Shown: positions 3,856 to 27,138 of the stretch, piece after piece | Layout of the letters: each line of letters opens with the position of its first letter | How positions within the stretch are numbered: position 1 is the stretch's first letter | Virus record (IMG/VR): IMGVR_UViG_3300008448_000001 | Location: 1 to 64,000 of that record | DNA length: 64,000 nt | Direction: 5' to 3' (one strand) | The notes under the pieces: model-generated | Databases searched by the model: none | Seen by the model: only the letters and a program-made list of their open reading frames with translations | What the model was told of the DNA's origin: nothing | Made by a program: the position numbers and the translations under genes

Positions 3856-4248
3856 CTAGCGTTGGCTGCTGGCGTGGTTCATTTTGCAATCGACAAACTC
3901 CGGCTGTTGGACCAGGTTTGTAATTTCGTTTTTAACGGCGACCCGGTTTCGGTTGTGGTTCCGAATAGCGACAGCGCGTTTGCCGATTTCGGCTAGGCCT
4001 AGCTCCAGGTCTAGCCCTTTTCGCAAGTCGTACTCGAGATCCCACATTTTCCCGTTGATTTCCTTCAGGCGGGAAACAAGATCCAGAAGCTGCGCATTGT
4101 CTTTGTCGACGCCTTCTCGCAAGTAGTTAATTTGTTTCGAAAGGAGCTCTTTGTCTACTTCGGTTTCGGACAGGCGTTCCATCTTCAGTTCTGCGATCGT
4201 TAGTCTGTCGCAGAGTTCGTTTATTGGCATTGGGATAGGTTTGATCAT
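3856..4248 (-). CDS. DUF6165/DUF4254-like helical protein
   Basis: PINELCDRLTIAELK ... LKEINGKMWDLEYDLRK ... NRNRVAVKNEI pattern; start at 4248 or 4230. Confidence 0.7.
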   Translation of the reverse strand: MIKPIPMPINELCDRLTIAELKMERLSETEVDKELLSKQINYLREGVDKDNAQLLDLVSRLKEINGKMWDLEYDLRKGLDLELGLAEIGKRAVAIRNHNRNRVAVKNEITNLVQQPEFVDCKMNHASSQR

Positions 4249-5356
4249 GTTTAGAAAAATTTTAGCTGTTAGCGATTTGCATTTGTCGGACACCATTTGG
4301 AAACACCGGCCTATCCATGGAGACAGCTACCACAGCTGGAGCTACATTGTGCAGTACGCTGTGCTGGCAGGCGTTGACGCTGTAATTCTAGCGGGCGACA
4401 TCTTGGACAAGCAACTAAATGTTGCAAATCCTGTTGCAAAGCTGAATGCGGGGCTTCTAAAGCTGCGAGACGCCGGAGTGACCGTGCTTTACAATCAGGG
4501 TCAACACGAGTTTCAACGCGACTTACCGTGGATGGACGTGGCCAACTTGGGTGCGAAACATTTAAAAGGCAAGTCGGACTTTTGCTTTTCGAACGGTCTT
4601 CGGATAGCTGGATTCGACTACTGCAACGAGAAAACTCTTGCGGAAAGGCTGGGTGAAATCGAAAAGGATTCTGGACAAGAGTATTTTCTTGTCTGTCACC
4701 AGGTCTGGAAAGATTTCATGGGTGACGTTGGAAAGACACAAGGTTGCTTTGATGATCTACCCAAAAACGTCAGATTTATGTTAACTGGTGATTTCCACCA
4801 AACGATTGTTCGCGAGGTTAGCAAAGATTTGACGGTTTTAAGCCCCGGAAGCACGCATTTGCGCAGCTTGGCGGAGCCGGCGGAAAAGCATTTCTTCGAG
4901 ATAAGTGCTGACCAGAAGGGCTTGTCGATTGAAGTCCGCGACATACCGACTCGGAGATACCTGGAAGTCAAAACAGGTACTTTGCCGTACTTACAGATTT
5001 CTGAGCGGGTTAAAACGTTTGTCGGACAAGATTTCGGAGATCTCCCGGAGGAGCTGCGGAAACCGATTGTTCGAATCGTCCACGGCAAGGATGATTTTGA
5101 TTTTGTGCGGCACATCAAAGAGAGTTTTGACGGCCTTGCTCACTTGTTTTTCAAGCTGAAGACGGTTTCTGTTGACGTTTTAAGTGTGGACACCACGACG
5201 GATGAGAGCCATTTGACGCTTCAAGCTTGTTTGCCGTTTGAGATCAACCCGCAGGGATCGCCTGCGGCCTACGGTTTGGCGTCCGAGCTTTTATCGGGTG
5301 CGGATCCGAACACTGTACTTGAACGTTGGTTAGAGGAGAATTTGAATGCAAATTGA
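4247..5356 (+). CDS. Mre11/SbcD-like metallophosphoesterase nuclease
   Basis: DLH, GDILD, GQHE, CHQ, GDFH motifs; directly upstream of the Rad50-like gene. Confidence 0.9.
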   Translation: MFRKILAVSDLHLSDTIWKHRPIHGDSYHSWSYIVQYAVLAGVDAVILAGDILDKQLNVANPVAKLNAGLLKLRDAGVTVLYNQGQHEFQRDLPWMDVANLGAKHLKGKSDFCFSNGLRIAGFDYCNEKTLAERLGEIEKDSGQEYFLVCHQVWKDFMGDVGKTQGCFDDLPKNVRFMLTGDFHQTIVREVSKDLTVLSPGSTHLRSLAEPAEKHFFEISADQKGLSIEVRDIPTRRYLEVKTGTLPYLQISERVKTFVGQDFGDLPEELRKPIVRIVHGKDDFDFVRHIKESFDGLAHLFFKLKTVSVDVLSVDTTTDESHLTLQACLPFEINPQGSPAAYGLASELLSGADPNTVLERWLEENLNAN

Positions 5357-7487
5357 GACAGTTGAGCTAAAGAACATCGGTCCCCACAGGGAGTTAACCG
5401 CGGAGTTGTCCTCTGGTATCGTCGGCATAGTCGGCGCCAACGGGGCGGGTAAGAGTTCGTTCGTGAACGCTATCTACGCCGCCTTTACGGGTGATTTCAC
5501 ACGCTTCAACGTGGCAACAAAGGCCGAGGCCATTAACAATCAGGCAGCTAAGCACGAAAAGTCTTGGATTAAGATTGTTGGAAACCATGGTTGTAAGCCG
5601 TTTGAGCTGGTTCGAAGCCTGCGTCCGAACGAGGTGACCTTCACATACGGCGACAGTGAGATCGAGACGGCTTCGCAGGTCAATGGCGCAGTTTTCAAGC
5701 TGCTGGGCCTGACGCCAAGCGTTTTTGATCGTTATGTGTTTGTCGAGCAGTGGGAAATGTTCAGCTTTCTTGATGACACGGAAAGCGTGCGGGCTAAAGC
5801 GTTTCAGCACTTGTGTGGAGTCGAGTCGGCCACTTCGCTGCACAAGGCTTGCGTGCAATTCCGGGACAGGCTCACGGCGAAGCAGTCAATTGACAACAGC
5901 CTGGACCTAGAAAGCAACATTGATCAAATTCAGAGGGAAATGCTGCGACTTAAGCGTACGAAGTTCGAAGGCTTGCTGCCCGACGACGAGGCAGCTGAAT
6001 TGCGACAGAAGCGGGATCTTTATCTGAAGGTTTCGCAGCTCGAGTCGCTTAAGTCGCAGGGTCTTATTGACCTCGAAGCATTGAAAAATGTTCTAGGCGA
6101 CAAAGAAAAAGTTTTCCAGGACGTGGAAACAAAGTTTAACAGAGCTGCCGATTGGCTGAAAAAGCACAAGACTTTGCTTGAAGCTGCGGTAGGGACTTTA
6201 CGCGACTGGCAGGCACAAAGCTCTCTTCAATCCAAGCAGGTAAGATGCCGTTCACTTATTAGAGACTGGGAGGCTAAGGTTGAAGCGACCGACGCAGAAA
6301 TAGCTTTGCACGCTGCAAAGTCTCCGAGTTTTTCGAAAGAGGAACTTGCGGGCTTAAAAGCGGAACTTCAAAGTTTAAGAACAAAAGCGAAGGAGTTAAA
6401 AACCGCCGTTAGTAACTTGGAGCAAGGCAGTCGGGCTGTGTGTTCTTCGTGCATGCAGAACATTCCTGCGTCGCATTCGGTGAAATTAAAAGCTGAAGCG
6501 GACGCTGTCGAAAGGCTGGCGGTGGAGAAAGCAAGACAGGTCATGGCCTCGCAGAACTATTGCGATCGGTCGGAATATCTGCTTGAGTTACGAAGAGAGC
6601 AGCAAGGTCTTTTGGTGAAATACCAATCGGAGCTGCAGGGACTGTCGCAGGCTTCGCAGTCGATTGTAACGCAAGACGCGGCAGACAGGGCAACGGCAGC
6701 CCTCGAGCAGCGTAAAAAGGCGGAAGCATCGTTTGCGGAGAGCAAACCGAAGCGAGACAGGTTGAAAGCAGAATTGGACGTGCTGAGAGGCCGCATATCG
6801 AACGCTGAAAGCCAGCTGCAAGAGTACGAGGCTCAGCTTGCAACTTTGACAACGGATCTCGGGTCGGCTGACGCATCGATACAGGAGAAGCTCGAACGGC
6901 ACGACGAGGCTTTACGCCAAAAGGCTGCGGTTTCCGCCGAGTACAAGACTAACGCAACGCAGTTGAGTACTTTGCAGGCGACGTTGAACAAGCTGAAAAC
7001 CTCGCTTGCCCGAGAAGCCAAGACCAGGTCGTTGGCCGAAGTAGTGGACAGGGTCGCTAACGCTTTTCATTGGTCTGGACTACCTAAGCGGGTAGCGCAG
7101 AACAATTTGATGCAGTTGGAAGCGGACATCAATACGCAGCTCGAGCTCTTCAGTTCTCCTTTTTTGGTTGAAACAACTGACGACCTGTCTTTCAAGGCGA
7201 CTTTCCCTGGCAAGCCCAGCGTGTCGGCAAGGCAGCTCAGTGGTGGTCAGAAAGTTATCCTGGCCATTGCTTTTCGGGCGGCTTTGGATAGGCTTTTCGG
7301 GCATAATATTGGGATGTTGTTCCTGGACGAACCTACGGCGGGATTGGACGCAGACAACGTCGCTTACTTCCATGACGCGATGCAGAGCTGGTCTGCAAAC
7401 GTTGGGGCGCAGAAGCAGATTATTGTCATCACGCACGTCCAAGACATGACAAGTGCCTTCGACCAAATTGTAACGATCGATAAATGA
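5346..7487 (+). CDS. Rad50/SbcC-like SMC ATPase
   Basis: Walker A GANGAGKS, long coiled coil with CSSC zinc hook, LSGGQ signature, LFLDEP, ITH. Confidence 0.95.
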   Translation: MQIETVELKNIGPHRELTAELSSGIVGIVGANGAGKSSFVNAIYAAFTGDFTRFNVATKAEAINNQAAKHEKSWIKIVGNHGCKPFELVRSLRPNEVTFTYGDSEIETASQVNGAVFKLLGLTPSVFDRYVFVEQWEMFSFLDDTESVRAKAFQHLCGVESATSLHKACVQFRDRLTAKQSIDNSLDLESNIDQIQREMLRLKRTKFEGLLPDDEAAELRQKRDLYLKVSQLESLKSQGLIDLEALKNVLGDKEKVFQDVETKFNRAADWLKKHKTLLEAAVGTLRDWQAQSSLQSKQVRCRSLIRDWEAKVEATDAEIALHAAKSPSFSKEELAGLKAELQSLRTKAKELKTAVSNLEQGSRAVCSSCMQNIPASHSVKLKAEADAVERLAVEKARQVMASQNYCDRSEYLLELRREQQGLLVKYQSELQGLSQASQSIVTQDAADRATAALEQRKKAEASFAESKPKRDRLKAELDVLRGRISNAESQLQEYEAQLATLTTDLGSADASIQEKLERHDEALRQKAAVSAEYKTNATQLSTLQATLNKLKTSLAREAKTRSLAEVVDRVANAFHWSGLPKRVAQNNLMQLEADINTQLELFSSPFLVETTDDLSFKATFPGKPSVSARQLSGGQKVILAIAFRAALDRLFGHNIGMLFLDEPTAGLDADNVAYFHDAMQSWSANVGAQKQIIVITHVQDMTSAFDQIVTIDK

Positions 7488-8308
7488 CAGATAGACAAAC
7501 CGTTTGTTTGCACGCAGACTCCAACGGCGACGTTTGGAGTCTGCAGGCTGGAAAAGGCATAGTTAGGCCTAAGTTTGACGTTTTACCTGCGTCGGACTTC
7601 TGGGTTGTTGGTTTCCCTTCCAATTATGCCATTCTGACGGAGTTGTACTTTGACACCGTAAGACGTTACAGCGCAAACGAAAAGAATTTGTCCAGCATAT
7701 ATGTCGGCTCGGTTTTTCCTTGGCGTCATTTTGACTGCAAGTCTAAGGATTTCCTGTACGATGTTGTTGCAGTTCCGCCTGCCAAGCGGCAAGCTTCGCA
7801 TTGGCACCTGCTGGACGATGCGTCCATCAGCACGTACTTACTTGCTAAAAGTTTATACGACGCATCTTACGACATGGCGGAGGTGGCCTGGCAAAACCAT
7901 TGTCTGGCCCCTGTTTTTTCGCGACTCGGCTGCGATGCGGACTTAGATCCTGCGATGTTTCTGGTTGCTGACATCTTGGATCCCCGTTGGTTCATGTCAG
8001 CAAACGGAAGTTTCAAGGCTTTGGAGCGGTACTTTGGACTTCAAAAGAGGTCGCACAGACTAGCGGACGCGAAATTTTTCATGCTGTCGGACGCCGTGAA
8101 AGCGATACCGAGCAATAGTTTTTTGCACGCGGAGGCCGAAGTCAGGAATCCGAGAGACAAGCTTTTCGCGATGCCTAGATTGTTTTTGCATTTTTTTGTA
8201 CGACATTGGCTTTCGTTTCAAACGCGGCTTTCGTTTTTTGATCCGTCTTTGTTCTTCAAAAGCCAGAAAGCAAAGCAAATGTACATAGATATTTTCGATC
8301 CGCAGTGA
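7484..8308 (+). CDS. hypothetical protein with IS110/Nop-domain-like C-terminal region
   Basis: AMFLVADILDPRWF...ALERYFGL and RLFLHFFVRHW resemble the conserved blocks of IS110/Nop RNA-binding domains; the ORF is well supported, the fold is tentative. Confidence 0.5.
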   Translation: MTDRQTVCLHADSNGDVWSLQAGKGIVRPKFDVLPASDFWVVGFPSNYAILTELYFDTVRRYSANEKNLSSIYVGSVFPWRHFDCKSKDFLYDVVAVPPAKRQASHWHLLDDASISTYLLAKSLYDASYDMAEVAWQNHCLAPVFSRLGCDADLDPAMFLVADILDPRWFMSANGSFKALERYFGLQKRSHRLADAKFFMLSDAVKAIPSNSFLHAEAEVRNPRDKLFAMPRLFLHFFVRHWLSFQTRLSFFDPSLFFKSQKAKQMYIDIFDPQ

Positions 8309-8787
8309 CAGAGTTTATCGCACGCTTACAGTTTGTCTCGCCTTGCCTGGGTAACGCCAAAGAACCCGGGTCGGGAAGGTTTTTGTTTAGTCGAAACCGC
8401 GAAGGCAAGATAGTTTTCTTGCCTGCTTGGCACAAATCGAACATGGTGATGGCAGCCAATTTGATATCAGGCTATCGCGAAGAAGTGCAACGTATTCTGT
8501 GGAGCACGGTGGTCGATGTAGAGCTGCGTGACAAACGATGGCATCGAGTTTACTATATGAGTGCTGCAGGCAGGGAGCGTTACTCTGTTCACGAGTCAAT
8601 CGCTGCGGGACAGTTGGCAGAAATAAGCCTTTCGCTTCCTGAGAACTTGCCGGTCGATGCTTTTTCGCGTTTGCTGGGGATTGCAGGTAAGCACAAAGGC
8701 TTATCGCCATGGCAACCCGGCACGTATGGGCACTACAGGGTTGTTGACGTGTTTGCGAAACCGACTCTGTTTACGGATAGTGAATAA
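8305..8787 (+). CDS. minimal Cas7-like RAMP protein (phage stand-alone type)
   Basis: N-terminal strand LQFVSPCLG, FSRNREG, HESIAAG and C-terminal G-rich loop GKHKGLSPWQPGTYGHYRV. Confidence 0.7.
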   Translation: MTEFIARLQFVSPCLGNAKEPGSGRFLFSRNREGKIVFLPAWHKSNMVMAANLISGYREEVQRILWSTVVDVELRDKRWHRVYYMSAAGRERYSVHESIAAGQLAEISLSLPENLPVDAFSRLLGIAGKHKGLSPWQPGTYGHYRVVDVFAKPTLFTDSE

Positions 8788-8819
8788 AAAAACCACCCGA
8801 GTTGTGACCCTCGGGTGGT
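8786..8819 (-). terminator. 10-bp hairpin with an A-run on the + strand side (intrinsic terminator in - orientation, or a structural RNA element)
   Basis: ACCACCCGAG 8792-8801 / CTCGGGTGGT 8810-8819, A-run 8786-8792. Confidence 0.5.
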
Positions 8820-8880
8820 AATTGGCTTAGCTGTCGTCGTTGCAGCTGATGCCATTTTAGCTGAAACCCTTTTACTTACA

Positions 8881-10428
8881 ATGGGACGCAGTATGGGTAA
8901 AGAAGTTGTTTTGATAAAAAACGGGAACATTTTGCTTGTTGATCCGGGCGTTGCAGACCAGAAAATAGTGGATATTCTGGGGCCCAAGCTTAGTTTCGAA
9001 TCGTTCCGCAAACTGGTCGGGCGTGAACTGTACGACGCAAAAAGAAACGGTTTAAAGACCTTCGCTATTGATCGGCATATCCTTTTCGAGCTGGACTTCA
9101 AGGGCCGGGTTGCCACGCCGTTTGGGTTTTGGAAAACCATATCTGAAACGCTGAGGGCCGCTGGCTATTCTGTAAGCTACAAGGACAACACGCCGACTGT
9201 CGTGAATCAACAACATAAAGCCGCGAAAAACCGAGCTTTACGTTTTGAGATGTTCATGGATAACATTGCAAGCTATCAGTTGCGAGATCATCAACCGGAG
9301 TTCCTGGATGCCATCATCAGAAACAGCTGTGGACGAATAGACTGCGCACCGGGTTTCGGTAAATCTTTCATGATTGGAATTGTGGCCTCTGTATTCCCTC
9401 GTGCGAGGATCGACGTTGTTTCCAAGCGTGTAGCGGTTCTGCGGGACAGAATTTACCCGGAGCTCACTTCGATGGTGGGTGACGTGGGTATCGTTGGCGG
9501 AGGAAAGAGCATCAAGGATCGCCGAGTTATGTGCTACACGGCTAACTCGTTGAAGCACAGCAAGGCGGACGCAGACATACTGATCGGGGACGAGTGTCAC
9601 GAACTCGCGGCGGATAAGGCGTCAGAGGAGCTCGTTCGCTATCAGGACAGTCGAAATTACGGGCTGTCGGCCAGCCACGACGTTCGTTACGACAACAAGG
9701 ACATGCGTTTGGAGGGCATATTCGGGCCGATCATCTACCGTGTTCCGTACCAGACAGCCCAAGGCTCCGGCCTGGTTGTTCCGATCGAGATAAGATGGAC
9801 AAACGTTAGACTGGACTACAATCCGTGTGCAGGGGTGGACACGGACGATTCTGTAAGGCGTAAACGCATCGGAATATGGACCAACGAATTGCGTAACTTG
9901 GCTATTGCAAACGACGCGAAAGCTTACGACAAGGACACGCAGGTTCTAATCACGGTCGACACAATTACTCACGCTTTTCATCTCAAGAAGCTGCTGCCGG
10001 AATTTACGCTGGTGTACGCGGACGAGGGACTGACGCCCGAGGAGTTGCAGAATTACAAGCGGCAGAAGTTTTGCTCTGCAACGGAGCCGCTGATGGACTT
10101 CACAAGAAAGAAGATGCTGACGCAAAAGTTTGAAAAGGGAGAGCTCAAGAAAGTGATCGCGACAACGGTGTGGAATGTCGGTGTTTCGTTCAACAATTTG
10201 ACTGTGCTTATCCGAGGTAATGGCGGTAGCAGTGCGATCGACAGCACGCAGATTCCTGGTCGCGTAAGTCGTATTGCGGACGGTAAAACTTTCGGTATTA
10301 TCCACGACTACCTCGACGGTTGGGACAAAGGCTTTGATCGTCAAACTAAAGGCCGTCTCAAGGTTTATCGCCAGCACGGTTGGGCGCAGAAATTCCCTGA
10401 CTCGCACCTTGAAAGGCTTTATTCTTAA
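8881..10428 (+). CDS. superfamily 2 DNA helicase (UvsW-like)
   Basis: CAPGFGKS Walker A, DECH, SAS motif III, QIPGRVSR motif VI; start at 8881 or 8893. Confidence 0.9.
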   Translation: MGRSMGKEVVLIKNGNILLVDPGVADQKIVDILGPKLSFESFRKLVGRELYDAKRNGLKTFAIDRHILFELDFKGRVATPFGFWKTISETLRAAGYSVSYKDNTPTVVNQQHKAAKNRALRFEMFMDNIASYQLRDHQPEFLDAIIRNSCGRIDCAPGFGKSFMIGIVASVFPRARIDVVSKRVAVLRDRIYPELTSMVGDVGIVGGGKSIKDRRVMCYTANSLKHSKADADILIGDECHELAADKASEELVRYQDSRNYGLSASHDVRYDNKDMRLEGIFGPIIYRVPYQTAQGSGLVVPIEIRWTNVRLDYNPCAGVDTDDSVRRKRIGIWTNELRNLAIANDAKAYDKDTQVLITVDTITHAFHLKKLLPEFTLVYADEGLTPEELQNYKRQKFCSATEPLMDFTRKKMLTQKFEKGELKKVIATTVWNVGVSFNNLTVLIRGNGGSSAIDSTQIPGRVSRIADGKTFGIIHDYLDGWDKGFDRQTKGRLKVYRQHGWAQKFPDSHLERLYS

Positions 10429-11222
10429 TGTTTTCGAAACCACCAAAACCTTCAAGTAGCTCCAAGCCTGTTCGCAATGAAGGTCTTTCGACCGACAGTC
10501 TTTCAGGTCATGTTTCGCTGTTCAAGCGGACGTATGTCTTAGAGCGTCGAGTTTTGGACATGTGTCGATCAGAGGGAGATTCCCCGGTATACAAGCCTGC
10601 GGCCAGTCTTGACGGCGGTAAACGATACAACACGCCGGAAGAGAAGTCGAAGCAGAACAGCTGGGAAGCAGCTTATCGCGCAGTTGCCTCCATCTGCAAA
10701 CCTGACACGCCGATCGAGTACGTTCGCATACTGTTCAACTCGCTACGGTACAGCTCGTTGCCGACTCCCAACGTGTTGCAGCTGGCTTCGGCGGCTAACG
10801 CGCAAATTGTGCGAGACTATGCAAAAGACGCGTTTAAGCGACTTCAGTCGAGTTTTATAACGGATTCGGCTAGAGCTAAAACGGAAATACTTTTGCGGCT
10901 CGGAGGGAAGGCCGGGACTAGGCAGGCTACGTTTACGGCGATATATTGCACCCTGCTGGATGCACGTTTGGGTTTATCTCCGCTTTACCGTTATTGTTTA
11001 GCGACGGATGCACTTCAAAAAGCACAGAACGAGCGTGAAGCTGGTGTGAACATGGATTTTGGAATTTCGCGTATGCAAACTTACGTGAAAGACTTGGAAT
11101 TCTTGGCAGCTTTCGACTACACCGTTTTTCCGGAAATTTACAGTTCGGTTTACGGAAGTAGTTTGCCGTCTGGTTTTAAAAAATTGGCTTTGTCTTTGGT
11201 GGATTCCGCCAGGGACGCGTAA
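10428..11222 (+). CDS. hypothetical protein in replication module
   Basis: TAATG coupling; 264 aa ORF. Confidence 0.75.
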   Translation: MFSKPPKPSSSSKPVRNEGLSTDSLSGHVSLFKRTYVLERRVLDMCRSEGDSPVYKPAASLDGGKRYNTPEEKSKQNSWEAAYRAVASICKPDTPIEYVRILFNSLRYSSLPTPNVLQLASAANAQIVRDYAKDAFKRLQSSFITDSARAKTEILLRLGGKAGTRQATFTAIYCTLLDARLGLSPLYRYCLATDALQKAQNEREAGVNMDFGISRMQTYVKDLEFLAAFDYTVFPEIYSSVYGSSLPSGFKKLALSLVDSARDA

Positions 11223-11233
11223 AGGAAATCGTC

Positions 11234-12928
11234 ATGAGTGGGCAGCAAAAAGTGCTGTCAGAAGCTCATTTGAAACTCTTTTTGGCTGTCTTGTTTCGCA
11301 ATGAGCAAGTGTTCGAGAGTTTCAAAGCAAGCCTGACAGCGAGTCATTTTGACTTTGCAGGGTATCAACTGCTCTACAAAGTTGTTTGGGATTACTTCAA
11401 CGAAAATCAATGTCTTCCGGATTTGTCGCAGATCAACGCGGACATTGCCAGTTACGTCGAAAAAGAATACTTTTCTCTCGACGATGACGAGTACGACGCG
11501 TTAGACGATTTTCTGTACTACGCTTTTGACCCTGGCCTGTTTAAGGAGCCGGACGGTCCGAAAAGCATCAAGGCAGAAAATTTCGCTTTTAACTTCGCGA
11601 CTAAGTTTTTGCTGGAGCAGCAGAAACGAGCCGCTATTTCTCAGCTGAGTGACCTCAGCGATGTAGGCCAGTTGCCGGCCATCTTTCAACAGGCTACAGC
11701 ACAAACTGAGTCGTTGATGGGTTTGTCGGTTTCCGGGGGCAGAAACCTGACGCTTCCGGTTGGCTGGGATAAACGGGCTGGTGTTTACCTGGAGTCTTGC
11801 GGTGTCAGTTTTCTGGATACCTTTCTTGAGGGTGGAACTGCCCCGGGCGAGGCCTACGGCGTGCTGGCACCGTTCGGATCCTACAAAACTACCTTGGCTG
11901 TAATGCTTTGGTACGCTGCCGCTAAGCAAGCGTGTAGTAAGTACTTGAGCGGGGAGTCGAACGGTAAAAAGGGCTTGGCAGTTCTCGTGTCTTATGAAGC
12001 GCCGTTGCAGGACGAGTTGCGGGACCGACTGCTGATGTATTCAGCACAGATATCTCGAACGCGGCTTCAAGCCATGGGCACGAACGGCGTTTCTATATTT
12101 GGAGTCGACCCGGAGACTCCGCAAGACTACGAAAAGATTTTGTTCAAGGAGCAGATAGCAAACGGTGTTTTTGAACCGGAGATGCAACGGTATGAGCGAG
12201 TTTTGCCGGTCGTGAACGAGCACACAGTTTGTCTTGATTTCACGGGCAGGCACGAGAAGTTTAAGACGGCTGGTAATCGTGGCGTATCGGAAATCGTTTC
12301 CGCGATAAAAGCGGAATTAAAGCGTTGCGGACCGGACTACTACATCGCGACCGTCATAGTCGACTATGTTGGGCTTATGGTGCAAAGAGATGCAACGGTG
12401 GACCCGAAGGAAAAACAACGCGAAGACAGGCTTTACCAGCTCGCAGGATTACAGCTTGTCAATCGCGTTGCTATGCCTTTTAACACACCTGTTTGGGCTT
12501 TTCACCAGCTTTCCGGCGAGGCAAATGCGATATTGAATCCTGCGAAAAGAATGGATCACACGCAAGCTAAAGGCTCTAGAAGTTTTGCCGAAAATCTGGC
12601 TTTCTGTTTTGTGGGTGGTCGTTTGAATGACGATTACATGGGTCAACTTTGTTGCTCCAAGCATCGGCGAGCCGGTCAGCACAATCCTGTGCTGTTAAAG
12701 GTTGACGGCTTGTTTAACACCGTCACGGCACCAGAAGGTTATACCGTGGACAGGCTTGGTAAGATCGTCAGGAAAGACAGCCTAGGTTCTTCGACTGTTT
12801 TGTCTCCGGATATGTTTAGTTCGGTTCCGGGCCTGTCGGAAACAGTAGAAGATCCTTTTGCCGATTACACAGAAGACAGCAGCATGGATTACGCTTCGGA
12901 GCAGGTTTCGAATTTAAGCGAAGAATAA
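11234..12928 (+). CDS. DnaB/gp41-like replicative helicase
   Basis: APFGSYKTT Walker A variant, VSYE, IVDYVGLM Walker B, HQLS, KHR; upstream of primase. Confidence 0.8.
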   Translation: MSGQQKVLSEAHLKLFLAVLFRNEQVFESFKASLTASHFDFAGYQLLYKVVWDYFNENQCLPDLSQINADIASYVEKEYFSLDDDEYDALDDFLYYAFDPGLFKEPDGPKSIKAENFAFNFATKFLLEQQKRAAISQLSDLSDVGQLPAIFQQATAQTESLMGLSVSGGRNLTLPVGWDKRAGVYLESCGVSFLDTFLEGGTAPGEAYGVLAPFGSYKTTLAVMLWYAAAKQACSKYLSGESNGKKGLAVLVSYEAPLQDELRDRLLMYSAQISRTRLQAMGTNGVSIFGVDPETPQDYEKILFKEQIANGVFEPEMQRYERVLPVVNEHTVCLDFTGRHEKFKTAGNRGVSEIVSAIKAELKRCGPDYYIATVIVDYVGLMVQRDATVDPKEKQREDRLYQLAGLQLVNRVAMPFNTPVWAFHQLSGEANAILNPAKRMDHTQAKGSRSFAENLAFCFVGGRLNDDYMGQLCCSKHRRAGQHNPVLLKVDGLFNTVTAPEGYTVDRLGKIVRKDSLGSSTVLSPDMFSSVPGLSETVEDPFADYTEDSSMDYASEQVSNLSEE

Positions 12929-12949
12929 ACGCAGAAAAGGGTAAGTGCA

Positions 12950-14050
12950 GTGGCAGACAAAAAACCCTTAAATATGTTGCTTTACAATCGTATTAAAGCG
13001 ACCTTTAAGAATGTCAGGATAAGTCATCAAAACGAGAAGCAAGAAAGGAACCGTCGAATTGATTTTGTTACCAATCGTGAAACGATCGACATAAAAAACT
13101 GGGGTGAGTCTTACTCTGTCTGCTGCCCGTTTTGCAACGATACTCGCTTTCGGTGTGTGATAAACCACCGGTATGGTACGCTGGACGAACACAACCGGAT
13201 TCAATCTAGGCTTGTGGTTTGCTTTAACGCCGGTTGTCCGCTGGCCTTGAAAACCCAAGACTGCTACGACCGACTTGAGCAGATGCTGACCGGAAGAAAA
13301 CTTTTTGACCTAGCTAAAGCGGAAATCGCAGTCGGTAGCGAGGTAGACATTGACGACTTCAGAATGAACTGGCCAGGTGAAGTTGTTCGCATAGATAAAC
13401 TTCCAGAAGACCATCCGGCTGTTTTGTGGCTTTCCGGAAACCGCGGTTTCAACGTGAAGAAACTCGGCACGTATTACAATGTTCACTGGTGCGTTAAAAG
13501 CAGACATGCTTTATGTCGCGACAGAATTGTCATACCGATTTACATGAACAAGAAGATGGTCGGTTTCCAAACCAGACCGCCTTACGACACAAACTGGAAG
13601 CTTGCGAGTGTTCCCAAGTACTACACCGCCAAGGGCACACCTAAGCGGCAGGTCATCTACAATCTTGGGAACATGATAAAGTGTGAAACCGGAATTGTTG
13701 TAGAGGGTGTTACGAGCGTTTGGCGGGGCGGTGATCCGTTCGGTGCTGTACTCGGTGCTGCTGTGACGCCGGCTCAATACGATTTACTCGTGAAGCACTT
13801 CAAAGACCATGCCGTTGTTTTGCTTTTCGACCCGGATCTGTTGCTAGAAAGCGAGAAGCGGAAAGTTTTGGACAGCTTGGTGGCAATCGAAAAACGCTTG
13901 AACGCGGATTTGAAAGGTGGTTGCTGCTTGGTTTGGTTGCCGGAGGGCACTGATCCGGCGGAATTCGAGGGGAATTTCTTGCGTAATTACATCGTCAATG
14001 CGGCGGCAGAGAAGGGTGTGACGGTCTCTTGGAGGAAGCGAAATGGCTAG
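12950..14050 (+). CDS. DNA primase (Zn-binding plus TOPRIM)
   Basis: CPFC..C.N.GC zinc domain, RIVIPI, FQTR, PKY, VEG, FDPD, LPEGTDP. Confidence 0.85.
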   Translation: MADKKPLNMLLYNRIKATFKNVRISHQNEKQERNRRIDFVTNRETIDIKNWGESYSVCCPFCNDTRFRCVINHRYGTLDEHNRIQSRLVVCFNAGCPLALKTQDCYDRLEQMLTGRKLFDLAKAEIAVGSEVDIDDFRMNWPGEVVRIDKLPEDHPAVLWLSGNRGFNVKKLGTYYNVHWCVKSRHALCRDRIVIPIYMNKKMVGFQTRPPYDTNWKLASVPKYYTAKGTPKRQVIYNLGNMIKCETGIVVEGVTSVWRGGDPFGAVLGAAVTPAQYDLLVKHFKDHAVVLLFDPDLLLESEKRKVLDSLVAIEKRLNADLKGGCCLVWLPEGTDPAEFEGNFLRNYIVNAAAEKGVTVSWRKRNG

Positions 14051-17000
14051 AAAGATAGAGAAGCTCGGCGGTGCCATCAGCGCTTCTGGTAAAGCAACTG
14101 TTGCCGAACAAAGACTTAAGCTGTCGCAGCTGGATAAAATACTTACAGGGTCTGAGATTTACAACTTGGACGCACCAGGTCTGCCTACGCTCTACGGCGG
14201 AAGTGCTTTTATTCAGTATGCTCAGGCGAAGGGCGACAGCAGTGATTCCTTCATGTATGACCTGATAAGGGCAGCTCTTCGGGACAAAGCGTTCGTTTTG
14301 CCAGTTGAAACGGCAGCGCATCAAACGAAAGACGCTCAGTTTTTGCCAGGGCATGTGTGGGGTTCAACTGTGGACGGGCCTAGGCGGGCCAAGATTATGA
14401 TCGTCAACAAAAACCCTTGGGTTTCAGCGATGAAAAACGGTCGTTGTTTTGGCGACGAGGATGGAAAAATCCTCATGGACATTTTTGCAGGCTGCAAGAT
14501 GACAGGTGTCGGAAACATTTACGTTACGCACCTTGTAAAGTTTATGCCGCCCAACGGTAAAACGACTTTCAGGGCTCAGTGGGTGAAGGACGGTGCTTAT
14601 CTTCTGGCACACGAGATCAAAATCGTGCAACCGGATTATATCTTGTGTCTAGGCACTGACGCCAGTAAGGCTTTGCTGGGCGACGGGCACGGTGTTAACG
14701 ACATGCTGGGTAAAGTCGTCAAGCACCGTTACAACGTTGCCTCGAACGAGAAAGACTTGGACTCGAGTTGGCGTGAGGCGAGCGTGATGACTGTCGTGCA
14801 TCCGCGTCAAACGGCAAGAGACCAGTCGGCTATCCGCGCGTTGGAAACGGGCTTAGCCGCCTTTGTAAACTTGACGCAGGGCAAGAACGTTAGCTTTGAC
14901 ACGGAAGTGGACCACAATGTGGTTTCTTCGTTTGATGAATTGATTTACTATTTTTCAGAAATCGACAAAGACTACGACCCTATTGAGGAGGTGATTGCGG
15001 TCGACGCGGAGTGGAACGGACAGCATCCGGTCAACAATGGTTCGTACATGCGGACAATTCAGCTTGCTTGGAAACCGGGAAAGGTAATCGGTATCATTCT
15101 GCATCTTGCAGGGGGTGCCGTTAATTCGGACATTGACGTCAAAAACAATCCCGAAGTTAAATCGTTGTTCAACGCTTTTTTCAAGGGAGGAAACGTCACC
15201 GTCACGCGAGAGGACGGGTCAGAAGCAGTTCTTCGGTTCAAACGCAAGCGTGTAATCGGGCACTTCTTCAACGCGGATTTGGAGTGGCTTGTTGCCTATG
15301 GTATAGACATTCAAGAGTGCTTCTCGTGCAAGCTCTATGACTTGGAAATACCTCCGGCAGATTCCGTACCGAAGGGCGCAAAGAGGCTTTTGAGCTTTTA
15401 CCTTGAAGACGGGTTTAAGCCCGGAGAAACCGTTCCGGCTTGGTACCGGACAAAGTACGAGGGCGGGGCTGACACGGGCCTTATGTGCCACGCGATAGAA
15501 GAGACGGCCAACTACAAGCTTGAGCTGCTTGCGGCCAGGTATCTTAACGCGCACAGATATGACGTGGATTTGCAAGAGTGGAAGACCAGCTACTGCAAAC
15601 AAAAGGGTCTGTCGTCGGAGTCGCTCGAAGGATATGGCGAATGCCCAGACAACGTCTTGCTGCCTTACGGCATGTGGGATGCGGATGTCACGCTTCGACT
15701 TTACTATAAGTTCAATCCTTTGCTCGATAGCGACTACGACGGTAACTGCTGCAGAGAAGCTTTTTGGGAAGCACAAATCGCCACGCCGGCTGTGTTGGAC
15801 ATTCACCGCAGCGGCATGACGCTCGACAGATCACGTGTTGATTTTCTGACGGTGCAGTTCCTTGACGGTCGAACCGCACTGGAGAGTAAAATACGCGAAA
15901 GTTTGAATTGGCCGGACTTCAACATTCGGTCTTTAACGCAGGTGCGAGAGGTCCTTTTCGGGCATTTGCTCAACGGCAAGCGAGACCCTGAGACAGGCGG
16001 TCCCGTTCGTGTGCGGCCAGCCGACGCGATCTCGTTGAACCTTATGCCGCTGTACGATACCAGCAAACCGCCGAAACAGTGGGAAGAGCTTCGACAAAAA
16101 AATGTTGAAAGCCAGCACAGCCCTTGTACCAGCAAGCAGGTTTTGTCAATTCTGGTGCAGACGGTGCCAGACGCAAAAACAAGAGAAATACTTGGGATGC
16201 TTCGGGATCACCGCTTTCTTGACCAAGCGTTGAAAACGGTTTTAAGGCCACCAAATACCGATCCTTGTACACAGGAAACTTGTTATGACGCTGACGGAAA
16301 CATGGAGTACGACAAGGGCCTAGCTTCCGTTTGTTGCTCAGACGGTAAAATCAGGACGCACATATACCAGACGAAGGAGACTGGTAGGTGGTCGAGCGCT
16401 AGACCCAACCTGACGAACATATCGAAGAAGCGTGACAAGGATTTCAAACGCATTCTAGGTAGCAGGTACAAGTATAAACTGCGAAGTATTTTAAAGGCCT
16501 CTCCGGGACACGTTTTCGTTGAAGCTGACTACGTCGGAGCAGAGCTTTTCGGTATGGCTGTTATGTCGGGAGACACAGCCATGATCGAGCACGCAAGGCG
16601 TAACCAGTTGGAGGACACGCACCCCAATTACTATGACATTCACTCGAATGTGGCAGTTAACGCCTTCAAGCTGAAATGCCCTCCAACCAAAAAAGGTCTG
16701 GAGCAGATCAAAAAGGATCACCTCCGCAACGTGGCGAAGTCCGTTATTTTCGGGATTGCTTACGGGCGAGGTGCCAAGGCTATTTCAGTGGGTGCGAAGG
16801 AGGAAGGTATCGATATTTCGGTGGACGAAGCAAGAGCGGTTATCAAGACCATTTTCGCAACGTACCCGAAGCTCGTACCGTTCTTCGAGGGTTGCAAGGA
16901 GCGTGCACGCGGTTACTACTTGGATAGTAATCATCAACCTGTGTCCGTACCGCGATACCTGTGCAACTGCTTTGGGCGATTTAGGCGTTTTCCGGACAGC

Positions 17001-17564
17001 TTTGGCGCTAGCGATTTGGAATCCGAGTTTGAACGGCAAGCTATGAATTTCCCGATTCAAAGCATGATTGCTTCGGTGGCAAGCAGGGCTGTTGGTTACC
17101 TGATTGACTACAGGAACAAGCAGATCAGCCTCGGGCACCACATGTTCAATTTGCTTCTGCAGATCCATGACGCATTGATCTTGGAGGTTCCGTACCGCTA
17201 CGTTAAACACGTGTGCGAGTATGTCATTCCTACGTACATGCGAAAAGCCGTCCCTATTTTCCCGACGCACATTAGCGGTATGCTCGAGGGTGAGCCCACA
17301 GGTGCGGGTCCCTTCTACCTTGGTATTGAGGGGGAGGTGACTACAAACTGGGGCGAGCGTATATTTGACGCGGACGCCAAAAGGCTTGGTCTGCCCGTAG
17401 GTCGTGGCGTTGTAGACGGATGCGTCGTGCACTATAGTCAGACGCCAAAAGCAGGCGAAGAGAGATCCGTTGTGGACGTCTCGAAACCTCGCGTCAAGCG
17501 AGACATAACACCTCCGGATCCGTATGTACCTGGTAAGTTCAAGTCATCAAAACGTAGGCGATAA
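14043..17564 (+). CDS. family A DNA polymerase with N-terminal uracil-DNA-glycosylase-like domain and 3'-5' exonuclease
   Basis: UDG-like block (YVTHLVK, EIKIVQPDYILCLG, HP); Exo I/II/III (VDAE, NADL, YGMWD); TGRWSS; motif A DYVGAEL; motif B RNVAKSVIFGIAYG; motif C QIHD. Confidence 0.95.
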   Translation: MARKIEKLGGAISASGKATVAEQRLKLSQLDKILTGSEIYNLDAPGLPTLYGGSAFIQYAQAKGDSSDSFMYDLIRAALRDKAFVLPVETAAHQTKDAQFLPGHVWGSTVDGPRRAKIMIVNKNPWVSAMKNGRCFGDEDGKILMDIFAGCKMTGVGNIYVTHLVKFMPPNGKTTFRAQWVKDGAYLLAHEIKIVQPDYILCLGTDASKALLGDGHGVNDMLGKVVKHRYNVASNEKDLDSSWREASVMTVVHPRQTARDQSAIRALETGLAAFVNLTQGKNVSFDTEVDHNVVSSFDELIYYFSEIDKDYDPIEEVIAVDAEWNGQHPVNNGSYMRTIQLAWKPGKVIGIILHLAGGAVNSDIDVKNNPEVKSLFNAFFKGGNVTVTREDGSEAVLRFKRKRVIGHFFNADLEWLVAYGIDIQECFSCKLYDLEIPPADSVPKGAKRLLSFYLEDGFKPGETVPAWYRTKYEGGADTGLMCHAIEETANYKLELLAARYLNAHRYDVDLQEWKTSYCKQKGLSSESLEGYGECPDNVLLPYGMWDADVTLRLYYKFNPLLDSDYDGNCCREAFWEAQIATPAVLDIHRSGMTLDRSRVDFLTVQFLDGRTALESKIRESLNWPDFNIRSLTQVREVLFGHLLNGKRDPETGGPVRVRPADAISLNLMPLYDTSKPPKQWEELRQKNVESQHSPCTSKQVLSILVQTVPDAKTREILGMLRDHRFLDQALKTVLRPPNTDPCTQETCYDADGNMEYDKGLASVCCSDGKIRTHIYQTKETGRWSSARPNLTNISKKRDKDFKRILGSRYKYKLRSILKASPGHVFVEADYVGAELFGMAVMSGDTAMIEHARRNQLEDTHPNYYDIHSNVAVNAFKLKCPPTKKGLEQIKKDHLRNVAKSVIFGIAYGRGAKAISVGAKEEGIDISVDEARAVIKTIFATYPKLVPFFEGCKERARGYYLDSNHQPVSVPRYLCNCFGRFRRFPDSFGASDLESEFERQAMNFPIQSMIASVASRAVGYLIDYRNKQISLGHHMFNLLLQIHDALILEVPYRYVKHVCEYVIPTYMRKAVPIFPTHISGMLEGEPTGAGPFYLGIEGEVTTNWGERIFDADAKRLGLPVGRGVVDGCVVHYSQTPKAGEERSVVDVSKPRVKRDITPPDPYVPGKFKSSKRRR

Positions 17565-26671: not shown

Positions 26672-27138
26672 TGTCTGAAGAGTATCAGTTTTATGTGCCA
26701 CAGGACAAGCTTGCGGACTACAGGGTTAAACACGCCCCGGCAGCTTGTCCTATTCTCGGCATGACCGGTGAAAAATTCCATCCAGTGGTCGACCACGATC
26801 ACAAGTCCGGCAGAATACGTGGCGTGATTTCGCTGGAGGTTAACGCTTTGATAGGCAAGGCGGAGAACTTCTATCGAAGCCGATGCGTGAACACTTCGGT
26901 TTCGTTGCCAGACGCTTTACGGCTTATTGCGGATTACTTGGAATCGTCGCAGGGCCCGTACCACCCTGTCGGCATTAGGCAGGTCGCCAAGCGTTTCGGG
27001 CGTTTGCCCAAGAAAGACCAAATTGATACCCTTCTTTCGATGGGGGTCGCCACAAGCCAAATTGAGGCTTGCAAGAGCGCGGCTAAAAGACAGGCTTTGT
27101 GGCGTAAATCGGTAGTTGCCGGAAGGGGCGTAAGCTGA
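26668..27138 (+). CDS. endonuclease VII-like (Holliday junction resolvase)
   Basis: CPIL ... VVDHDHKSGRIRGVI...N...GK. Confidence 0.85.
   Translation: MMSEEYQFYVPQDKLADYRVKHAPAACPILGMTGEKFHPVVDHDHKSGRIRGVISLEVNALIGKAENFYRSRCVNTSVSLPDALRLIADYLESSQGPYHPVGIRQVAKRFGRLPKKDQIDTLLSMGVATSQIEACKSAAKRQALWRKSVVAGRGVS

What the first reader, a model, noticed from the sequence alone, without database searches (positions are those of the whole stretch)
7484..10428. Candidate RNA-guided module: Nop/IS110-like protein, minimal Cas7-like RAMP and SF2 helicase inside a phage replisome cluster
Seen: sbcC, the 274-aa ORF and the 160-aa ORF are translationally coupled (ATGA and GTGA overlaps), followed by twin hairpins and a DECH helicase. 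The 160-aa protein has RAMP hallmarks and the 274-aa protein has IS110/Nop-like blocks. Established: RAMPs (Cas7) and Nop domains (IS110 bridge recombinases, TIGR-Tas, box C/D RNPs) are independent guide-RNA-binding scaffolds, and type IV-A CRISPR pairs Cas7 with a helicase. Inference: two such scaffolds side by side, between Mre11-Rad50 and a helicase and with no cas1/cas2 or CRISPR array, may be an undescribed RNA-guided system. Alternatively they are a domesticated recombination/replication complex. I found no guide array in this window.
Basis: partly seen in the sequence, partly recalled or inferred. Interest (0 to 1): 0.85.

Follow-up and report, generated by a model that had tools for sequence, protein, structure and literature searches.

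The report
Array-less Vipr-like RAMP in phage replisome operon
The 160-residue protein really is a minimal CRISPR-type RNA-binding (RAMP) protein, a divergent relative of the recently described phage 'Vipr' guide-RNA proteins. Here it has no guide-RNA repeats nearby and is a fixed part of the DNA-replication operon of a widespread group of roughly 200-kb phages seen in freshwater and other metagenomes. Its 274-residue neighbour shows no sign of being IS110/Nop-like.

Summary
**Observation:** mostly confirmed. The ATGA and GTGA overlaps, two hairpins and a DECH SF2 helicase are all present.

**ORF-B (8305-8787):**
- Its model has the RAMP topology. All 50 top PDB matches are Cas7, Csm3, Cmr4, Cmr1 or type VII Cas7 (E about 1e-6).
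- Its family (198 clusters) is homologous to Vipr proteins that sit next to real YNNGG vrRNA arrays (hhalign 97.8%, E 1e-12).
- It forms a separate clade (100/100 support) and is about 45 residues shorter, lacking the insertion where SUSP1 Vipr has its alpha-bundle.
- The arginines equivalent to R138 and R179, conserved in array-linked Viprs, are replaced. The G-loop reads S-P-aromatic instead of G-D-aromatic-R-P.
- No period-5 repeat array, CRISPR-like array or Rfam RNA occurs in the 64-kb window. None occurs within 6-10 kb of the gene in seven divergent lineages.
- All seven lineages keep the order SbcD, SbcC, (ORF-A), RAMP, XPB-like helicase, about 200 aa, DnaB-like, primase, PolA.

**ORF-A (7484-8308):** a conserved orphan family with no IS110, Nop or other match.

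**Verdict:** a new, probably exapted variant of the VIPR/RAMP kind. Its nucleic-acid partner is unknown. About 140 kb of the genome could not be scanned.

The parts
4151..5356 (+). sbcD/Mre11-like phosphoesterase. The true start may lie downstream of the TTG at 4151.
   Evidence: Metallophos and PHROG SbcD-like hits. A similarly sized gene is called directly upstream of sbcC in nearly all related loci, with a Metallophos hit on record only in L013; in L010 a 131-aa ORF intervenes.
5346..7487 (+). sbcC/Rad50-like ATPase
   Evidence: PHROG 77 at E 1e-42, plus SMC_N and SbcC_Walker_B. Its stop overlaps the ORF-A start.
7484..8308 (+). ORF-A, 274 aa. A conserved orphan protein that follows sbcC in 6 of 7 lineages; fold and function unknown.
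   Evidence: Six close homologues. Remote homologues lie at the same position in L007, L014 and L010. No family, PDB or fold match. The AF2 model has pLDDT 56.
8305..8787 (+). ORF-B, 160 aa. A Vipr-superfamily minimal RAMP of the array-less 'SP' clade.
   Evidence: AF2 model with pLDDT 77 and pTM 0.75, showing a beta-alpha-beta-(hairpin)-beta-alpha-beta topology. Top 50 Foldseek PDB hits are all Cas7, Csm3, Cmr4, Cmr1 or type VII Cas7. The four BFVD matches with E below 0.001 are 194-275-aa viral proteins, one of them named a RAMP. hhalign against array-adjacent Viprs gives 97.8%, E 1e-12 over 147 columns. The Vipr HMM picks ORF-B as the best ORF in the window.
8518..8601 (+). Codons for the predicted thumb beta-hairpin (residues 72-99). 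It ends in the nearly invariant H96-E97, which aligns with R138-P139 of SUSP1 Vipr.
   Evidence: Residue roles in SUSP1 Vipr are from bioRxiv 10.64898/2026.04.26.720927.
8686..8730 (+). Codons for the glycine-rich loop (residues 128-142, GKHKGLSPWQPGTYG).
   Evidence: G132 and G142 are invariant; G128, S134 and P135 are nearly invariant across 106 family members. The motif contrasts with the G-[GC]-[DR]-[WFY]-R-P of array-linked Viprs.
8792..8819 (.). 10-bp G+C-rich hairpin directly after ORF-B. It has an A-run upstream and no T-run downstream, so by consensus it is a minus-strand-type terminator.
   Evidence: Two compensatory pair changes in L003/L004. Unrelated strong hairpins occupy the same position in L014 and L139.
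8823..8854 (+). Second, weaker stem-loop in the ORF-B/helicase spacer.
   Evidence: MFE fold. It lies in a spacer no more conserved than the flanking genes: 72% against 64-74% nucleotide identity to L003.
8881..10428 (+). XPB-like SF2 helicase with a DECH box. The ORF is open from the GTG at 8815; other clades start at the equivalent of 8881-8893.
   Evidence: ResIII + Helicase_C, and PHROG 16 at E 3e-40. Best PDB relatives are archaeal XPBII at E 1.6e-10. It is directly downstream of the RAMP gene in 7 of 7 lineages.
10428..14050 (+). 264-aa orphan (10428-11222), DnaB-like helicase (11234-12928) and primase (12950-14050). This is the conserved continuation of the operon.
   Evidence: The same order is seen in all related loci.
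14043..17564 (+). Family A DNA polymerase, fused to a UDG domain in relatives.
   Evidence: PHROG 17 at E 6.5e-78. UDG + DNA_pol_A in the syntenic loci.

Best explanation
ORF-B is a divergent member of the Vipr branch of the RAMP superfamily. This branch holds the minimal one-RRM proteins that, in VIPR systems, polymerise along a guide RNA.

In this phage lineage the gene is not a mobile two-gene VIPR cassette. It is a fixed gene of the replication-recombination operon, translationally coupled to sbcC and ORF-A and always followed by an XPB-like SF2 helicase, a DnaB-like helicase, a primase and PolA.

Shown:
- The fold and the homology to Vipr.
- The separate clade and the altered reading residues.
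- The missing insertion between beta1 and helix-1.
- The absence of vrRNA-type repeats near the gene.
- The invariant synteny.

Inferred:
- The protein still coats a single-stranded nucleic acid through helix-1, thumb and G-loop. The nucleic acid is most likely RNA, possibly ssDNA. The protein is basic and the aromatic G-loop residue is kept.
- It does not read the GGY/NN code.
- It has been exapted to act with the XPB-like translocase, and in most clades ORF-A, on phage DNA during replication or recombination. Possible roles are stabilising or forming R-loop or ssDNA intermediates next to SbcCD processing.

ORF-A is a lineage-specific partner of unknown fold, not an IS110/Nop protein.
For: Fold:
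- The AF2 model has RAMP topology with a thumb hairpin and G-loop.
- All top-50 PDB matches are Cas7-type RAMPs, with E from 2e-6 and TM 0.49-0.65.
- Viral RAMP-like matches appear in BFVD.
- ESM Atlas structural neighbours are RAMP, Csm4 and Csb2.

Homology to Vipr:
- The best PDB sequence hit of the family profile is the SUSP1 Vipr protein.
- The family HMM finds about 200-aa ORFs lying beside YNNGG arrays, with E down to 2e-8.
- Profile-profile comparison gives 97.8%, E 1e-12.
- The reciprocal HMM search picks ORF-B.

Distinct clade:
- A 100/100 split separates it from array-linked Viprs.
- The motifs are SP-aromatic against GD-aromatic-RP, and HE against RP.
- Median length is 167 against 211 aa, with no helices between beta1 and helix-1.

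No arrays:
- Scanners that recover all four SUSP1 vrRNAs find nothing in the window or the syntenic loci.
- TRF, direct-repeat and Rfam searches are negative.

Core synteny:
- It holds in 7 of 7 informative lineages, down to about 25% identity and across 44-68% GC.
- No homologue of ORF-A or of the window's SbcC, DnaB-like helicase or primase lies next to any of at least 120 array-bearing loci. Eight of those loci do carry an SF2 helicase weakly similar to the window's helicase family, E 1e-8 to 1e-3.

Charge: the family is basic, median pI 9.3.
Against: - No RNA or DNA ligand was observed. No RNA-seq run holding the locus was listed.
- Only 64 kb of a 205-kb genome could be read, so distal guide genes are not excluded.
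- The residue argument is imperfect. D177 is itself replaced by R in some array-linked Viprs, and the aromatic residue that stacks on G2 is retained.
- The published VIPR types include variants with NNNNG-like repeats and helicase accessory genes. Their figures and data could not be read, so this clade may already be one of them.
- The AF2 model rests on a 6-sequence alignment.
- The tree is unrooted, and the two groups were ascertained differently.
Confidence: 0.5

Rival explanations
1. It is a bona fide VIPR system: RNA-guided DNA binding, with the helicase and/or ORF-A as accessory 'vap' genes. Its vrRNAs would be encoded more than 10 kb away, or would use a repeat code that my scans do not recognise.
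For: - Full-length homology to Vipr.
- The aromatic G-loop residue is retained.
- The preprint reports types with helicase accessory genes, single vrRNAs, and NNNGG, YNNNG or NNNNG variants.
- Array-bearing loci L036 and L091 do pair a Vipr with an SF2 helicase.
- About 140 kb of the genome was not seen.
- Structured spacers follow the RAMP gene in some lineages.
Against: - No period-5 signal of any base composition in 64 kb, or within 6-10 kb in seven lineages. The same test scores 19-20 out of 20 on all four SUSP1 vrRNAs.
- In three lineages the RAMP gene is 0-19 nt from the helicase gene, with no long flanking spacers.
- The arginines equivalent to R138 and R179, conserved in array-linked Viprs, are lost.
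- The gene behaves as a core operon gene, not as a variable cassette.
Confidence: 0.25
2. It is an RNA-binding regulator or processing factor of the replication operon. It would be Cas6-like in hairpin recognition or cleavage, or a T4 RegA-like translational repressor, acting on the hairpin next to its own gene.
For: - A strong G+C-rich hairpin lies directly after the RAMP gene in the window and L003 (with compensatory changes), and in L014 and L139.
- An H-E pair is nearly invariant.
- Cas6 RAMPs are hairpin-specific endoribonucleases, and T4 regA lies within its replication gene cluster (established knowledge).
Against: - The hairpin is absent where the RAMP and helicase genes abut (L007, L010, L013).
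- Structural matches are to backbone Cas7/Csm3 subunits, not Cas6.
- The hairpins may simply be terminators or stabilisers.
Confidence: 0.13
3. It is a single-strand DNA-binding or annealing protein of the recombination machinery, an SSB or mediator substitute built on a RAMP fold and acting with SbcCD and UvsX.
For: - Its position is between SbcCD and the helicases, with a UvsX-like recombinase at 20102-21649 and endonuclease VII at 26668-27138.
- No recognisable SSB was found among 38 window proteins scanned against PHROGs.
- The protein is basic and of a filament-forming kind.
Against: - No RAMP is known to act as an SSB.
- Most window proteins are orphans, so a missing SSB hit means little.
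- The region beyond about 38 kb was scanned only in part.
Confidence: 0.1

Closest known systems
VIPR type II (Escherichia phage SUSP1 Vipr + Vap1 + vrRNAs; bioRxiv 10.64898/2026.04.26.720920 and .720927; PDB 36pp)
   Same: Phage-encoded, single-RRM minimal RAMP of about 160-200 aa. It has helix-1, a thumb and a C-terminal AG...G...aromatic...YGxFxV G-loop. Homology is detectable by profile. No cas genes and no CRISPR array.
   Different: - SUSP1 has four YNNGG vrRNA genes in long spacers flanking vipr (recovered). Here there are none.
- SUSP1 R138, D177 and R179 correspond here to H, P and a variable residue.
- ORF-B lacks the roughly 25-45-residue insertion between beta1 and helix-1, where the alpha-bundle (K33) lies.
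- ORF-A is unrelated to Vap1.
- The SUSP1 locus is an accessory cassette lost by deletion in many relatives, whereas this gene is fixed in a replication operon.
Helicase-associated VIPR loci (e.g. IMG/VR loci L036 and L091), probably the preprint's helicase-vap type
   Same: A Vipr-family RAMP encoded next to an SF2 helicase in a phage contig.
   Different: - Those loci carry long YNNGG arrays between vipr and the helicase.
- Their Viprs have the GD-F-RP motif and fall on the other side of the 100/100 split.
- Their helicases are 620-750 aa and only weakly similar, E 1e-6 to 1e-8.
- No SbcCD, DnaB or primase context.
CRISPR type III Csm3/Cmr4 and type VII Cas7 backbone subunits
   Same: These are the best structural matches to the model: RRM core, thumb and G-loop.
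   Different: - No sequence-level similarity.
- ORF-B is smaller.
- No Cas10, Cas5, Cas11 or Cas6 partners and no CRISPR array.
Type IV-A CRISPR (Csf Cas7 backbone plus DinG helicase)
   Same: The concept of a RAMP filament paired with an SF2 helicase and no nuclease (established knowledge).
   Different: - The helicase here is XPB-like, not DinG.
- No Csf1, Csf3 or Cas6 and no array.
- PADLOC finds no cas or defence model for ORF-A or ORF-B.
Archaeal XPB (XPBII)-Bax1 and phage T4 UvsW-type SF2 helicases
   Same: The downstream helicase is most similar to XPBII. Its position in a replication/recombination cluster resembles phage accessory helicases.
   Different: No Bax1-like nuclease was detected. 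ORF-A and ORF-B have no counterpart in those systems.

Membership tests
RAMP superfamily (Cas5/Cas6/Cas7-like) | Ferredoxin/RRM-like beta-alpha-beta-beta-alpha-beta core | tested here: met
   AF2 model (pLDDT 77, pTM 0.75): E2-10, H40-54, E65-71, hairpin E76-82/E92-99, E104-111, H117-130, E144-151.
RAMP superfamily (Cas5/Cas6/Cas7-like) | Glycine-rich loop between helix-2 and the last strand | tested here: met
   G128, G132 and G142 are invariant or nearly invariant in 106 sequences.
RAMP superfamily (Cas5/Cas6/Cas7-like) | Thumb beta-hairpin and overall structural similarity to solved RAMPs | tested here: met
   All 50 best PDB matches are Cas7, Csm3, Cmr4, Cmr1 or type VII Cas7; E 1.8e-6 to 1.3e-4, probability 1.00.
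CRISPR-Cas system | CRISPR array and further cas genes nearby | tested here: not met
   No arrays by TRF or direct-repeat search. No PADLOC or Pfam cas hits. Only one RAMP-like ORF in the window.
VIPR system | Vipr protein: homology to the minimal RAMP encoded beside vrRNA arrays | tested here: met
   hhalign of A3 against A5 gives 97.8%, E 1e-12, 147 columns. HMM hits in both directions.
VIPR system | vrRNA genes: 9-16 YNNGG (or NNNGG, YNNNG, NNNNG) tandem repeats plus a tail in DNA flanking vipr | tested here: not met
   None in the 64-kb window or within 6-10 kb in seven lineages. The same scans recover all four SUSP1 vrRNAs. The remaining 140 kb or so of the genome was not available.
VIPR system | Residues that read the GGY motif in SUSP1 Vipr (H17, R138, D177, W178, R179) | tested here: not met
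   By alignment these correspond to N17 or variable, H96, P135, W136 (aromatic kept) and Q137 or variable. R138 is nearly invariant and R179 invariant in 31 array-linked Viprs.
VIPR system | Alpha-helical bundle between beta1 and helix-1 that holds the skipped target base | tested here: inconclusive
   ORF-B has only about 29 loop residues there with low pLDDT and no helix. Array-linked Viprs have an insertion at this place, and median length is 211 against 167 aa. No solved or predicted Vipr structure could be superposed.
VIPR system | Minimal locus (vipr + vap) flanked by long spacers; an accessory, variable cassette | tested here: not met
   The gene is embedded in the sbcCD-helicase-dnaB-primase-polA operon with 4-nt overlaps. 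Synteny is invariant in 7 of 7 lineages.
VIPR system | Vipr co-purifies with its RNA and silences matching DNA | not testable with these tools
   No RNA run holding the locus was listed.
IS110 recombinase / Nop-domain proteins (for ORF-A) | Match to DEDD_Tnp_IS110, Transposase_20 or Nop profiles | tested here: not met
   No Pfam, NCBIfam, PHROG or PADLOC hit at E up to 1 for ORF-A. Across its nine homologues there are only three single-member Pfam hits at E 0.13-0.36, none of them these families. PDB sequence and profile searches give nothing related; the best is an ATP synthase gamma subunit at E 0.06.
IS110 recombinase / Nop-domain proteins (for ORF-A) | Conserved DEDD catalytic residues in an RNase H-like N-terminal domain | tested here: not met
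   Invariant columns across clades are G15, G43, G75, W107, Y118, H139, P167, R168, W169, G185, R221, W242, F252 and F258. No acidic residue is invariant.
IS110 recombinase / Nop-domain proteins (for ORF-A) | Fold similarity | tested here: inconclusive
   The model has pLDDT 56. The best Foldseek E is 0.37 with no transposase or Nop hit. The Atlas models are also poor.
XPB-like SF2 helicase (for the 8881-10428 gene) | SF2 motifs (Walker A GxGKS, DExH box, Helicase_C) and closest relatives | tested here: met
   ResIII + Helicase_C. The G-K of the GxGK[ST] Walker A motif and the D-E-x-H of the DExH box are invariant in 6 lineages. Archaeal XPBII matches at E 1.6e-10.

The most novel reading that the evidence does not exclude
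The 'SP-clade' Vipr is a nucleic-acid-guided or nucleic-acid-loaded filament built into a phage replisome. One possibility is a RAMP-RNA complex that opens duplex DNA into R-loops at origins or breaks, for the XPB-like helicase, DnaB and primase to use. It would read a code other than GGY/NN. That would be the first RAMP with a housekeeping role in DNA replication, and a second recognition code in the lineage proposed to predate CRISPR.
Probability: 0.2. Interest if true: 0.9.

Novelty: new variant of a known kind. Interest (0 to 1): 0.68.

Why it matters
VIPR was described only in 2026. It is proposed as the viral ancestor of CRISPR RAMPs, and it is defined by the GGY/NN repeat code.

This report describes a large sister clade of at least 198 clusters at 50% identity. 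It occurs in roughly 200-kb phages; the window's own phage is seen in many freshwater and lake metagenomes. The clade keeps the fold but loses the arginines conserved in array-linked Viprs, loses the bundle insertion and has no nearby arrays. It is instead locked into the replication-recombination operon next to an XPB-like helicase.

Two readings are possible:
- RAMPs have a non-defence, replisome-associated function.
- A second, unrecognised guide architecture exists.

Either result bears on how RNA-guided systems arose and would give a new minimal nucleic-acid-binding scaffold.

Tried and rejected
**Uninformative or negative searches**
- Direct family searches of ORF-A and ORF-B (Pfam, PHROGs, PADLOC, NCBIfam, PDB sequences) found nothing.
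- Megablast and tblastn against cultured phages found no relative of the locus or of ORF-B. The nearest polymerase is only about 25% identical.
- The search for related loci with the broad RAMP alignments failed because they are too diverse.
They cannot say whether this contig has arrays elsewhere, but they supplied the array-linked comparison set.

**Rejected ideas about ORF-A**
- A second RAMP: hhalign gives 1%.
- A Vap1 homologue: hhalign gives 0.2%.

**Rejected candidate guide elements**
- Period-6 signals turned out to be coding repeats. These are K/A and GAC repeats in the window, and Gly-Tyr repeat ORFs in L003. They are absent from the extra 2.5 kb upstream of the window start in L002.
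- The ORF-B/helicase spacer is no more conserved than its flanking genes and is missing in three lineages.

**Other**
- Metatranscriptome support: no RNA run holding the locus was listed.
- The minus-strand promoter-like site plus terminator around 8790-8880 was noted but rests on consensus matches only.

Full report
**What is there**

The window is the first 64 kb of IMG/VR contig IMGVR_UViG_3300008448_000001, which is 204,794 bp. Nearly all genes are on the + strand, and GC skew is positive throughout.

The finding sits in one operon:

| Gene | Coordinates |
|---|---|
| sbcD-like | 4151-5356 |
| sbcC-like | 5346-7487 |
| ORF-A, 274 aa | 7484-8308 |
| ORF-B, 160 aa | 8305-8787 |
| SF2 helicase | 8815/8881-10428 |
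| 264-aa orphan | 10428-11222 |
| DnaB-like helicase | 11234-12928 |
| primase | 12950-14050 |
| family A DNA polymerase | 14043-17564 |
| thymidylate kinase | 17570-18241 |
| UvsX-like recombinase | 20102-21649 |

- The ATGA (7484-7487) and GTGA (8305-8308) overlaps are real. They recur in a relative with 57% protein identity (L003).
- After ORF-B there are two stem-loops, at 8792-8819 and 8823-8854. The fold z-score is -4.7.
- The first stem-loop keeps its pairing in L003/L004 through two G-C to A-U double changes.
- The helicase has a DECH box. Its nearest solved relatives are archaeal XPBII at E 1.6e-10.
- The phage has no close cultured relative.
- Its DNA is found in many freshwater and lake metagenomes from separate studies.

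**ORF-B is a RAMP**

- Sequence libraries gave nothing.
- An exhaustive profile search found a large family: 198 clusters at 50% identity with E up to 0.001, and 138 with E up to 1e-10.
- AlphaFold2 on the close homologues gave a usable model with pLDDT 77 and pTM 0.75. It shows beta1, a long loop, helix-1, beta2, a beta-hairpin, beta3, helix-2, a glycine-rich loop and beta4.
- In Foldseek against the PDB, all 50 best matches are Cas7-type RAMPs: Csm3, Cmr4, Cmr1 and type VII Cas7. E runs from 1.8e-6, probability is 1.00, and query TM is 0.49-0.65.
- Against BFVD the four significant matches are 194-275-aa viral proteins, one of them annotated as a RAMP.
- The ESM Atlas independently gave RAMP, Csm4 and Csb2 structural neighbours.

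**It belongs to the Vipr branch**

- A profile of 106 family members (A3) had as its best PDB sequence hit 'SUSP1 Vipr protein' (36pp), matching over the G-loop.
- VIPR (Viral Interference Programmable Repeat) was described in 2026 (bioRxiv 10.64898/2026.04.26.720920). It consists of three parts:
  - a minimal RAMP (Vipr);
  - an accessory gene (vap);
  - vrRNAs made of 9-16 YNNGG repeats plus a 3' tail, encoded in the spacers flanking vipr.
- Vipr protomers polymerise on the vrRNA and read DNA through the NN dinucleotides (10.64898/2026.04.26.720927).
- I fetched the SUSP1 locus (L005). I also fetched at least 120 IMG/VR loci carrying 8 or more perfect YNNGG units.
- The ORF-B family HMM hits ORFs of roughly 180-260 aa lying beside those arrays, with E down to 2e-8. 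SUSP1 Vipr is among them.
- An alignment of 31 such array-linked proteins (A5) matches the ORF-B family profile over 147 columns, at 97.8% probability and E 1e-12.
- An HMM of A5 picks ORF-B as the best ORF in the whole window, at E 6.7e-7.

**It is a distinct, array-less clade**

- In a maximum-likelihood tree, the 106 family members and 32 array-linked Viprs fall on opposite sides of one branch with 100/100 support. The tree is unrooted and the two sets were ascertained differently.
- Array-linked Viprs carry AG-x3-G-[LIV]-[GC]-[DR]-[WFY]-R-P...[YF]GxFxV. The ORF-B family carries AG-x-Y-x-G-[LI]-S-P-[WFY]-x-P...YGxFxV.
- Mapping onto SUSP1 Vipr, with residue roles:

| SUSP1 Vipr residue | Role in SUSP1 | ORF-B family |
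|---|---|---|
| D177 | reads G1 | invariant P135 |
| R179 | holds Y3 | variable |
| R138-P139 | thumb; salt bridge to G2 | nearly invariant H96-E97 |
| W178 | stacks on G2 | kept as an aromatic |

- R179 is invariant and R138 nearly invariant in the 31 array-linked proteins.
- Caveat: D177 is itself R in one array-linked subclade.
- The family is also shorter, with a median of 167 against 211 aa. It lacks the insertion between beta1 and helix-1, where SUSP1 Vipr has its alpha-bundle.

The array searches gave the following:

- My scanners covered YNNGG, NNNGG, YNNNG and NNNNG, plus a base-agnostic period-5 test.
- They recover all four SUSP1 vrRNAs, with scores of 19-20 out of 20.
- They find nothing above chance in the 64-kb window.
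- In the syntenic loci they give only a few marginal hits, in G+C-rich loci. Those I placed on the gene maps lie inside called genes.
- TRF, direct-repeat and Rfam searches are also negative.

**The context is a core replication operon**

- I looked up family members down to about 25% identity.
- Every contig long enough to judge shows the same order. That is seven lineages, with GC from 44 to 68% and contigs up to 214 kb.
- The order is SbcD, SbcC, 0-2 ORFs, RAMP, XPB-like helicase, a protein of about 200 aa, DnaB-like helicase, primase, UDG-PolA.
- In three lineages the RAMP and helicase genes are 0-19 nt apart, which leaves no room for a guide gene.
- None of the array-bearing loci has a homologue of ORF-A or of this SbcC, DnaB-like helicase or primase.
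- A few of them (for example L036 and L091) do pair a canonical Vipr with a longer SF2 helicase, with arrays lying between the two genes.
- These are probably the helicase-accessory type mentioned in the preprint. I could not read that paper's figures or data. I therefore cannot say whether the present clade is already classified there.

**ORF-A**

- It has six close homologues.
- It has remote homologues at the same position after sbcC in L007, L014 and L010. The A1 profile gives E about 3e-8 for the first two, L010 is linked through BLAST to L007 at 5e-11, and hhalign to L007 gives 92%.
- A similarly sized gene occupies that position in L136 and L139.
- It is absent in L013, where the RAMP gene follows sbcC directly.
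- No library, PDB profile, fold search or Atlas search gives a credible match.
- No acidic residue is invariant.
- It is unrelated to the RAMP family and to SUSP1 Vap1.
- The IS110/Nop reading is therefore unsupported. The fold remains unknown because the model is poor, with pLDDT 56.

**How it most likely works**

Shown: a Vipr-family RAMP, basic (median pI 9.3), fixed in and co-translated with a replication-recombination operon, always followed by an XPB-like translocase, and lacking the GGY-code hallmarks.

Inferred:
- It still binds a single-stranded nucleic acid as an oligomer, as Cas7 and Vipr do.
- It does so without the GGY/NN code.
- It has been exapted to act with the helicase (and ORF-A) on replication or recombination intermediates.

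Rivals:
- A true VIPR whose guides lie elsewhere or use an unrecognised code. About 140 kb was not seen.
- A Cas6- or RegA-like RNA-binding regulator acting on the hairpin after its gene. Such hairpins recur in four lineages but are absent in three.
- An SSB or mediator substitute. No SSB was recognised among the 38 window proteins scanned against PHROGs, which is weak evidence.

No RNA-seq run holding the locus was listed, so no ligand is shown.

**Verdict**

- The Nop/IS110 half is not supported.
- The 'undescribed RNA-guided system' is now partly described as VIPR.
- This is a new variant of that kind: an array-less, replisome-embedded Vipr clade whose partner nucleic acid and function are unknown.

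Noticed in passing
L003:125-446 and L003:451-752: Two tandem small ORFs, about 9.3-9.9 kb upstream of the ORF-A homologue. Each is made of roughly 40 GGC-NAC hexamers (Gly-Tyr/Asp/Asn repeats), with shared 5' and 3' ends and good Shine-Dalgarno sites. They are probably Gly/Tyr-rich proteins. The 'GGY+NNN' look is superficially guide-like. They are absent from the window and from the 2.5 kb upstream of it in L002.
   Followed up: partly
window 649-2565 (continues upstream in L002:1-2517): A 638-aa ORF built of about 100-aa (about 300-nt) tandem repeats that share the motif AACCCTTCGGAAACTCCGAA. It has no PHROG match.
   Followed up: no
window 8815-8880: The helicase ORF is open from the GTG at 8815 and would add a hydrophobic 22-residue N-terminal extension (MVIGLAVVVAADAILAETLLLT). 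This extension is also open and similar in L003. Other clades start at the equivalent of 8881-8893, so the true start is uncertain.
   Followed up: partly
window 8792-8819; L014:8384-8496; L139:6522-6710: A strong G+C-rich hairpin lies directly after the RAMP gene in several lineages, with unrelated sequences. The L139 spacer (189 nt) folds at -89 kcal/mol. In the window the hairpin has the form of a minus-strand terminator, with a promoter-like site on the minus strand at 8881-8854.
   Followed up: partly
window 26668-27138 and 20102-21649: Endonuclease VII-like (PHROG 423, E 9e-19) and UvsX-like recombinase genes lie downstream of the replication operon. Together with SbcCD they suggest recombination-dependent replication.
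   Followed up: no
L007, L010, L013, L136 (polymerase genes); contig 1hz6ASF9: In relatives the family A polymerase is fused to an N-terminal UDG domain. In one contig it also carries an intein with a LAGLIDADG domain.
   Followed up: no
window 54737-56800 (repeats at 56008-56182) and 48184-49059: Coding 18-nt (EEAKKA-type) and AAAGCC (Lys/Ala) tandem repeats lie inside large ORFs. They caused the period-6 hits and a weak spurious match to the Vipr HMM (E 0.0012).
   Followed up: partly
L007:1947-2222 (minus strand); L139:1214-1357: Small CsrA-family genes lie a few kb upstream of sbcD in two related lineages.
   Followed up: no
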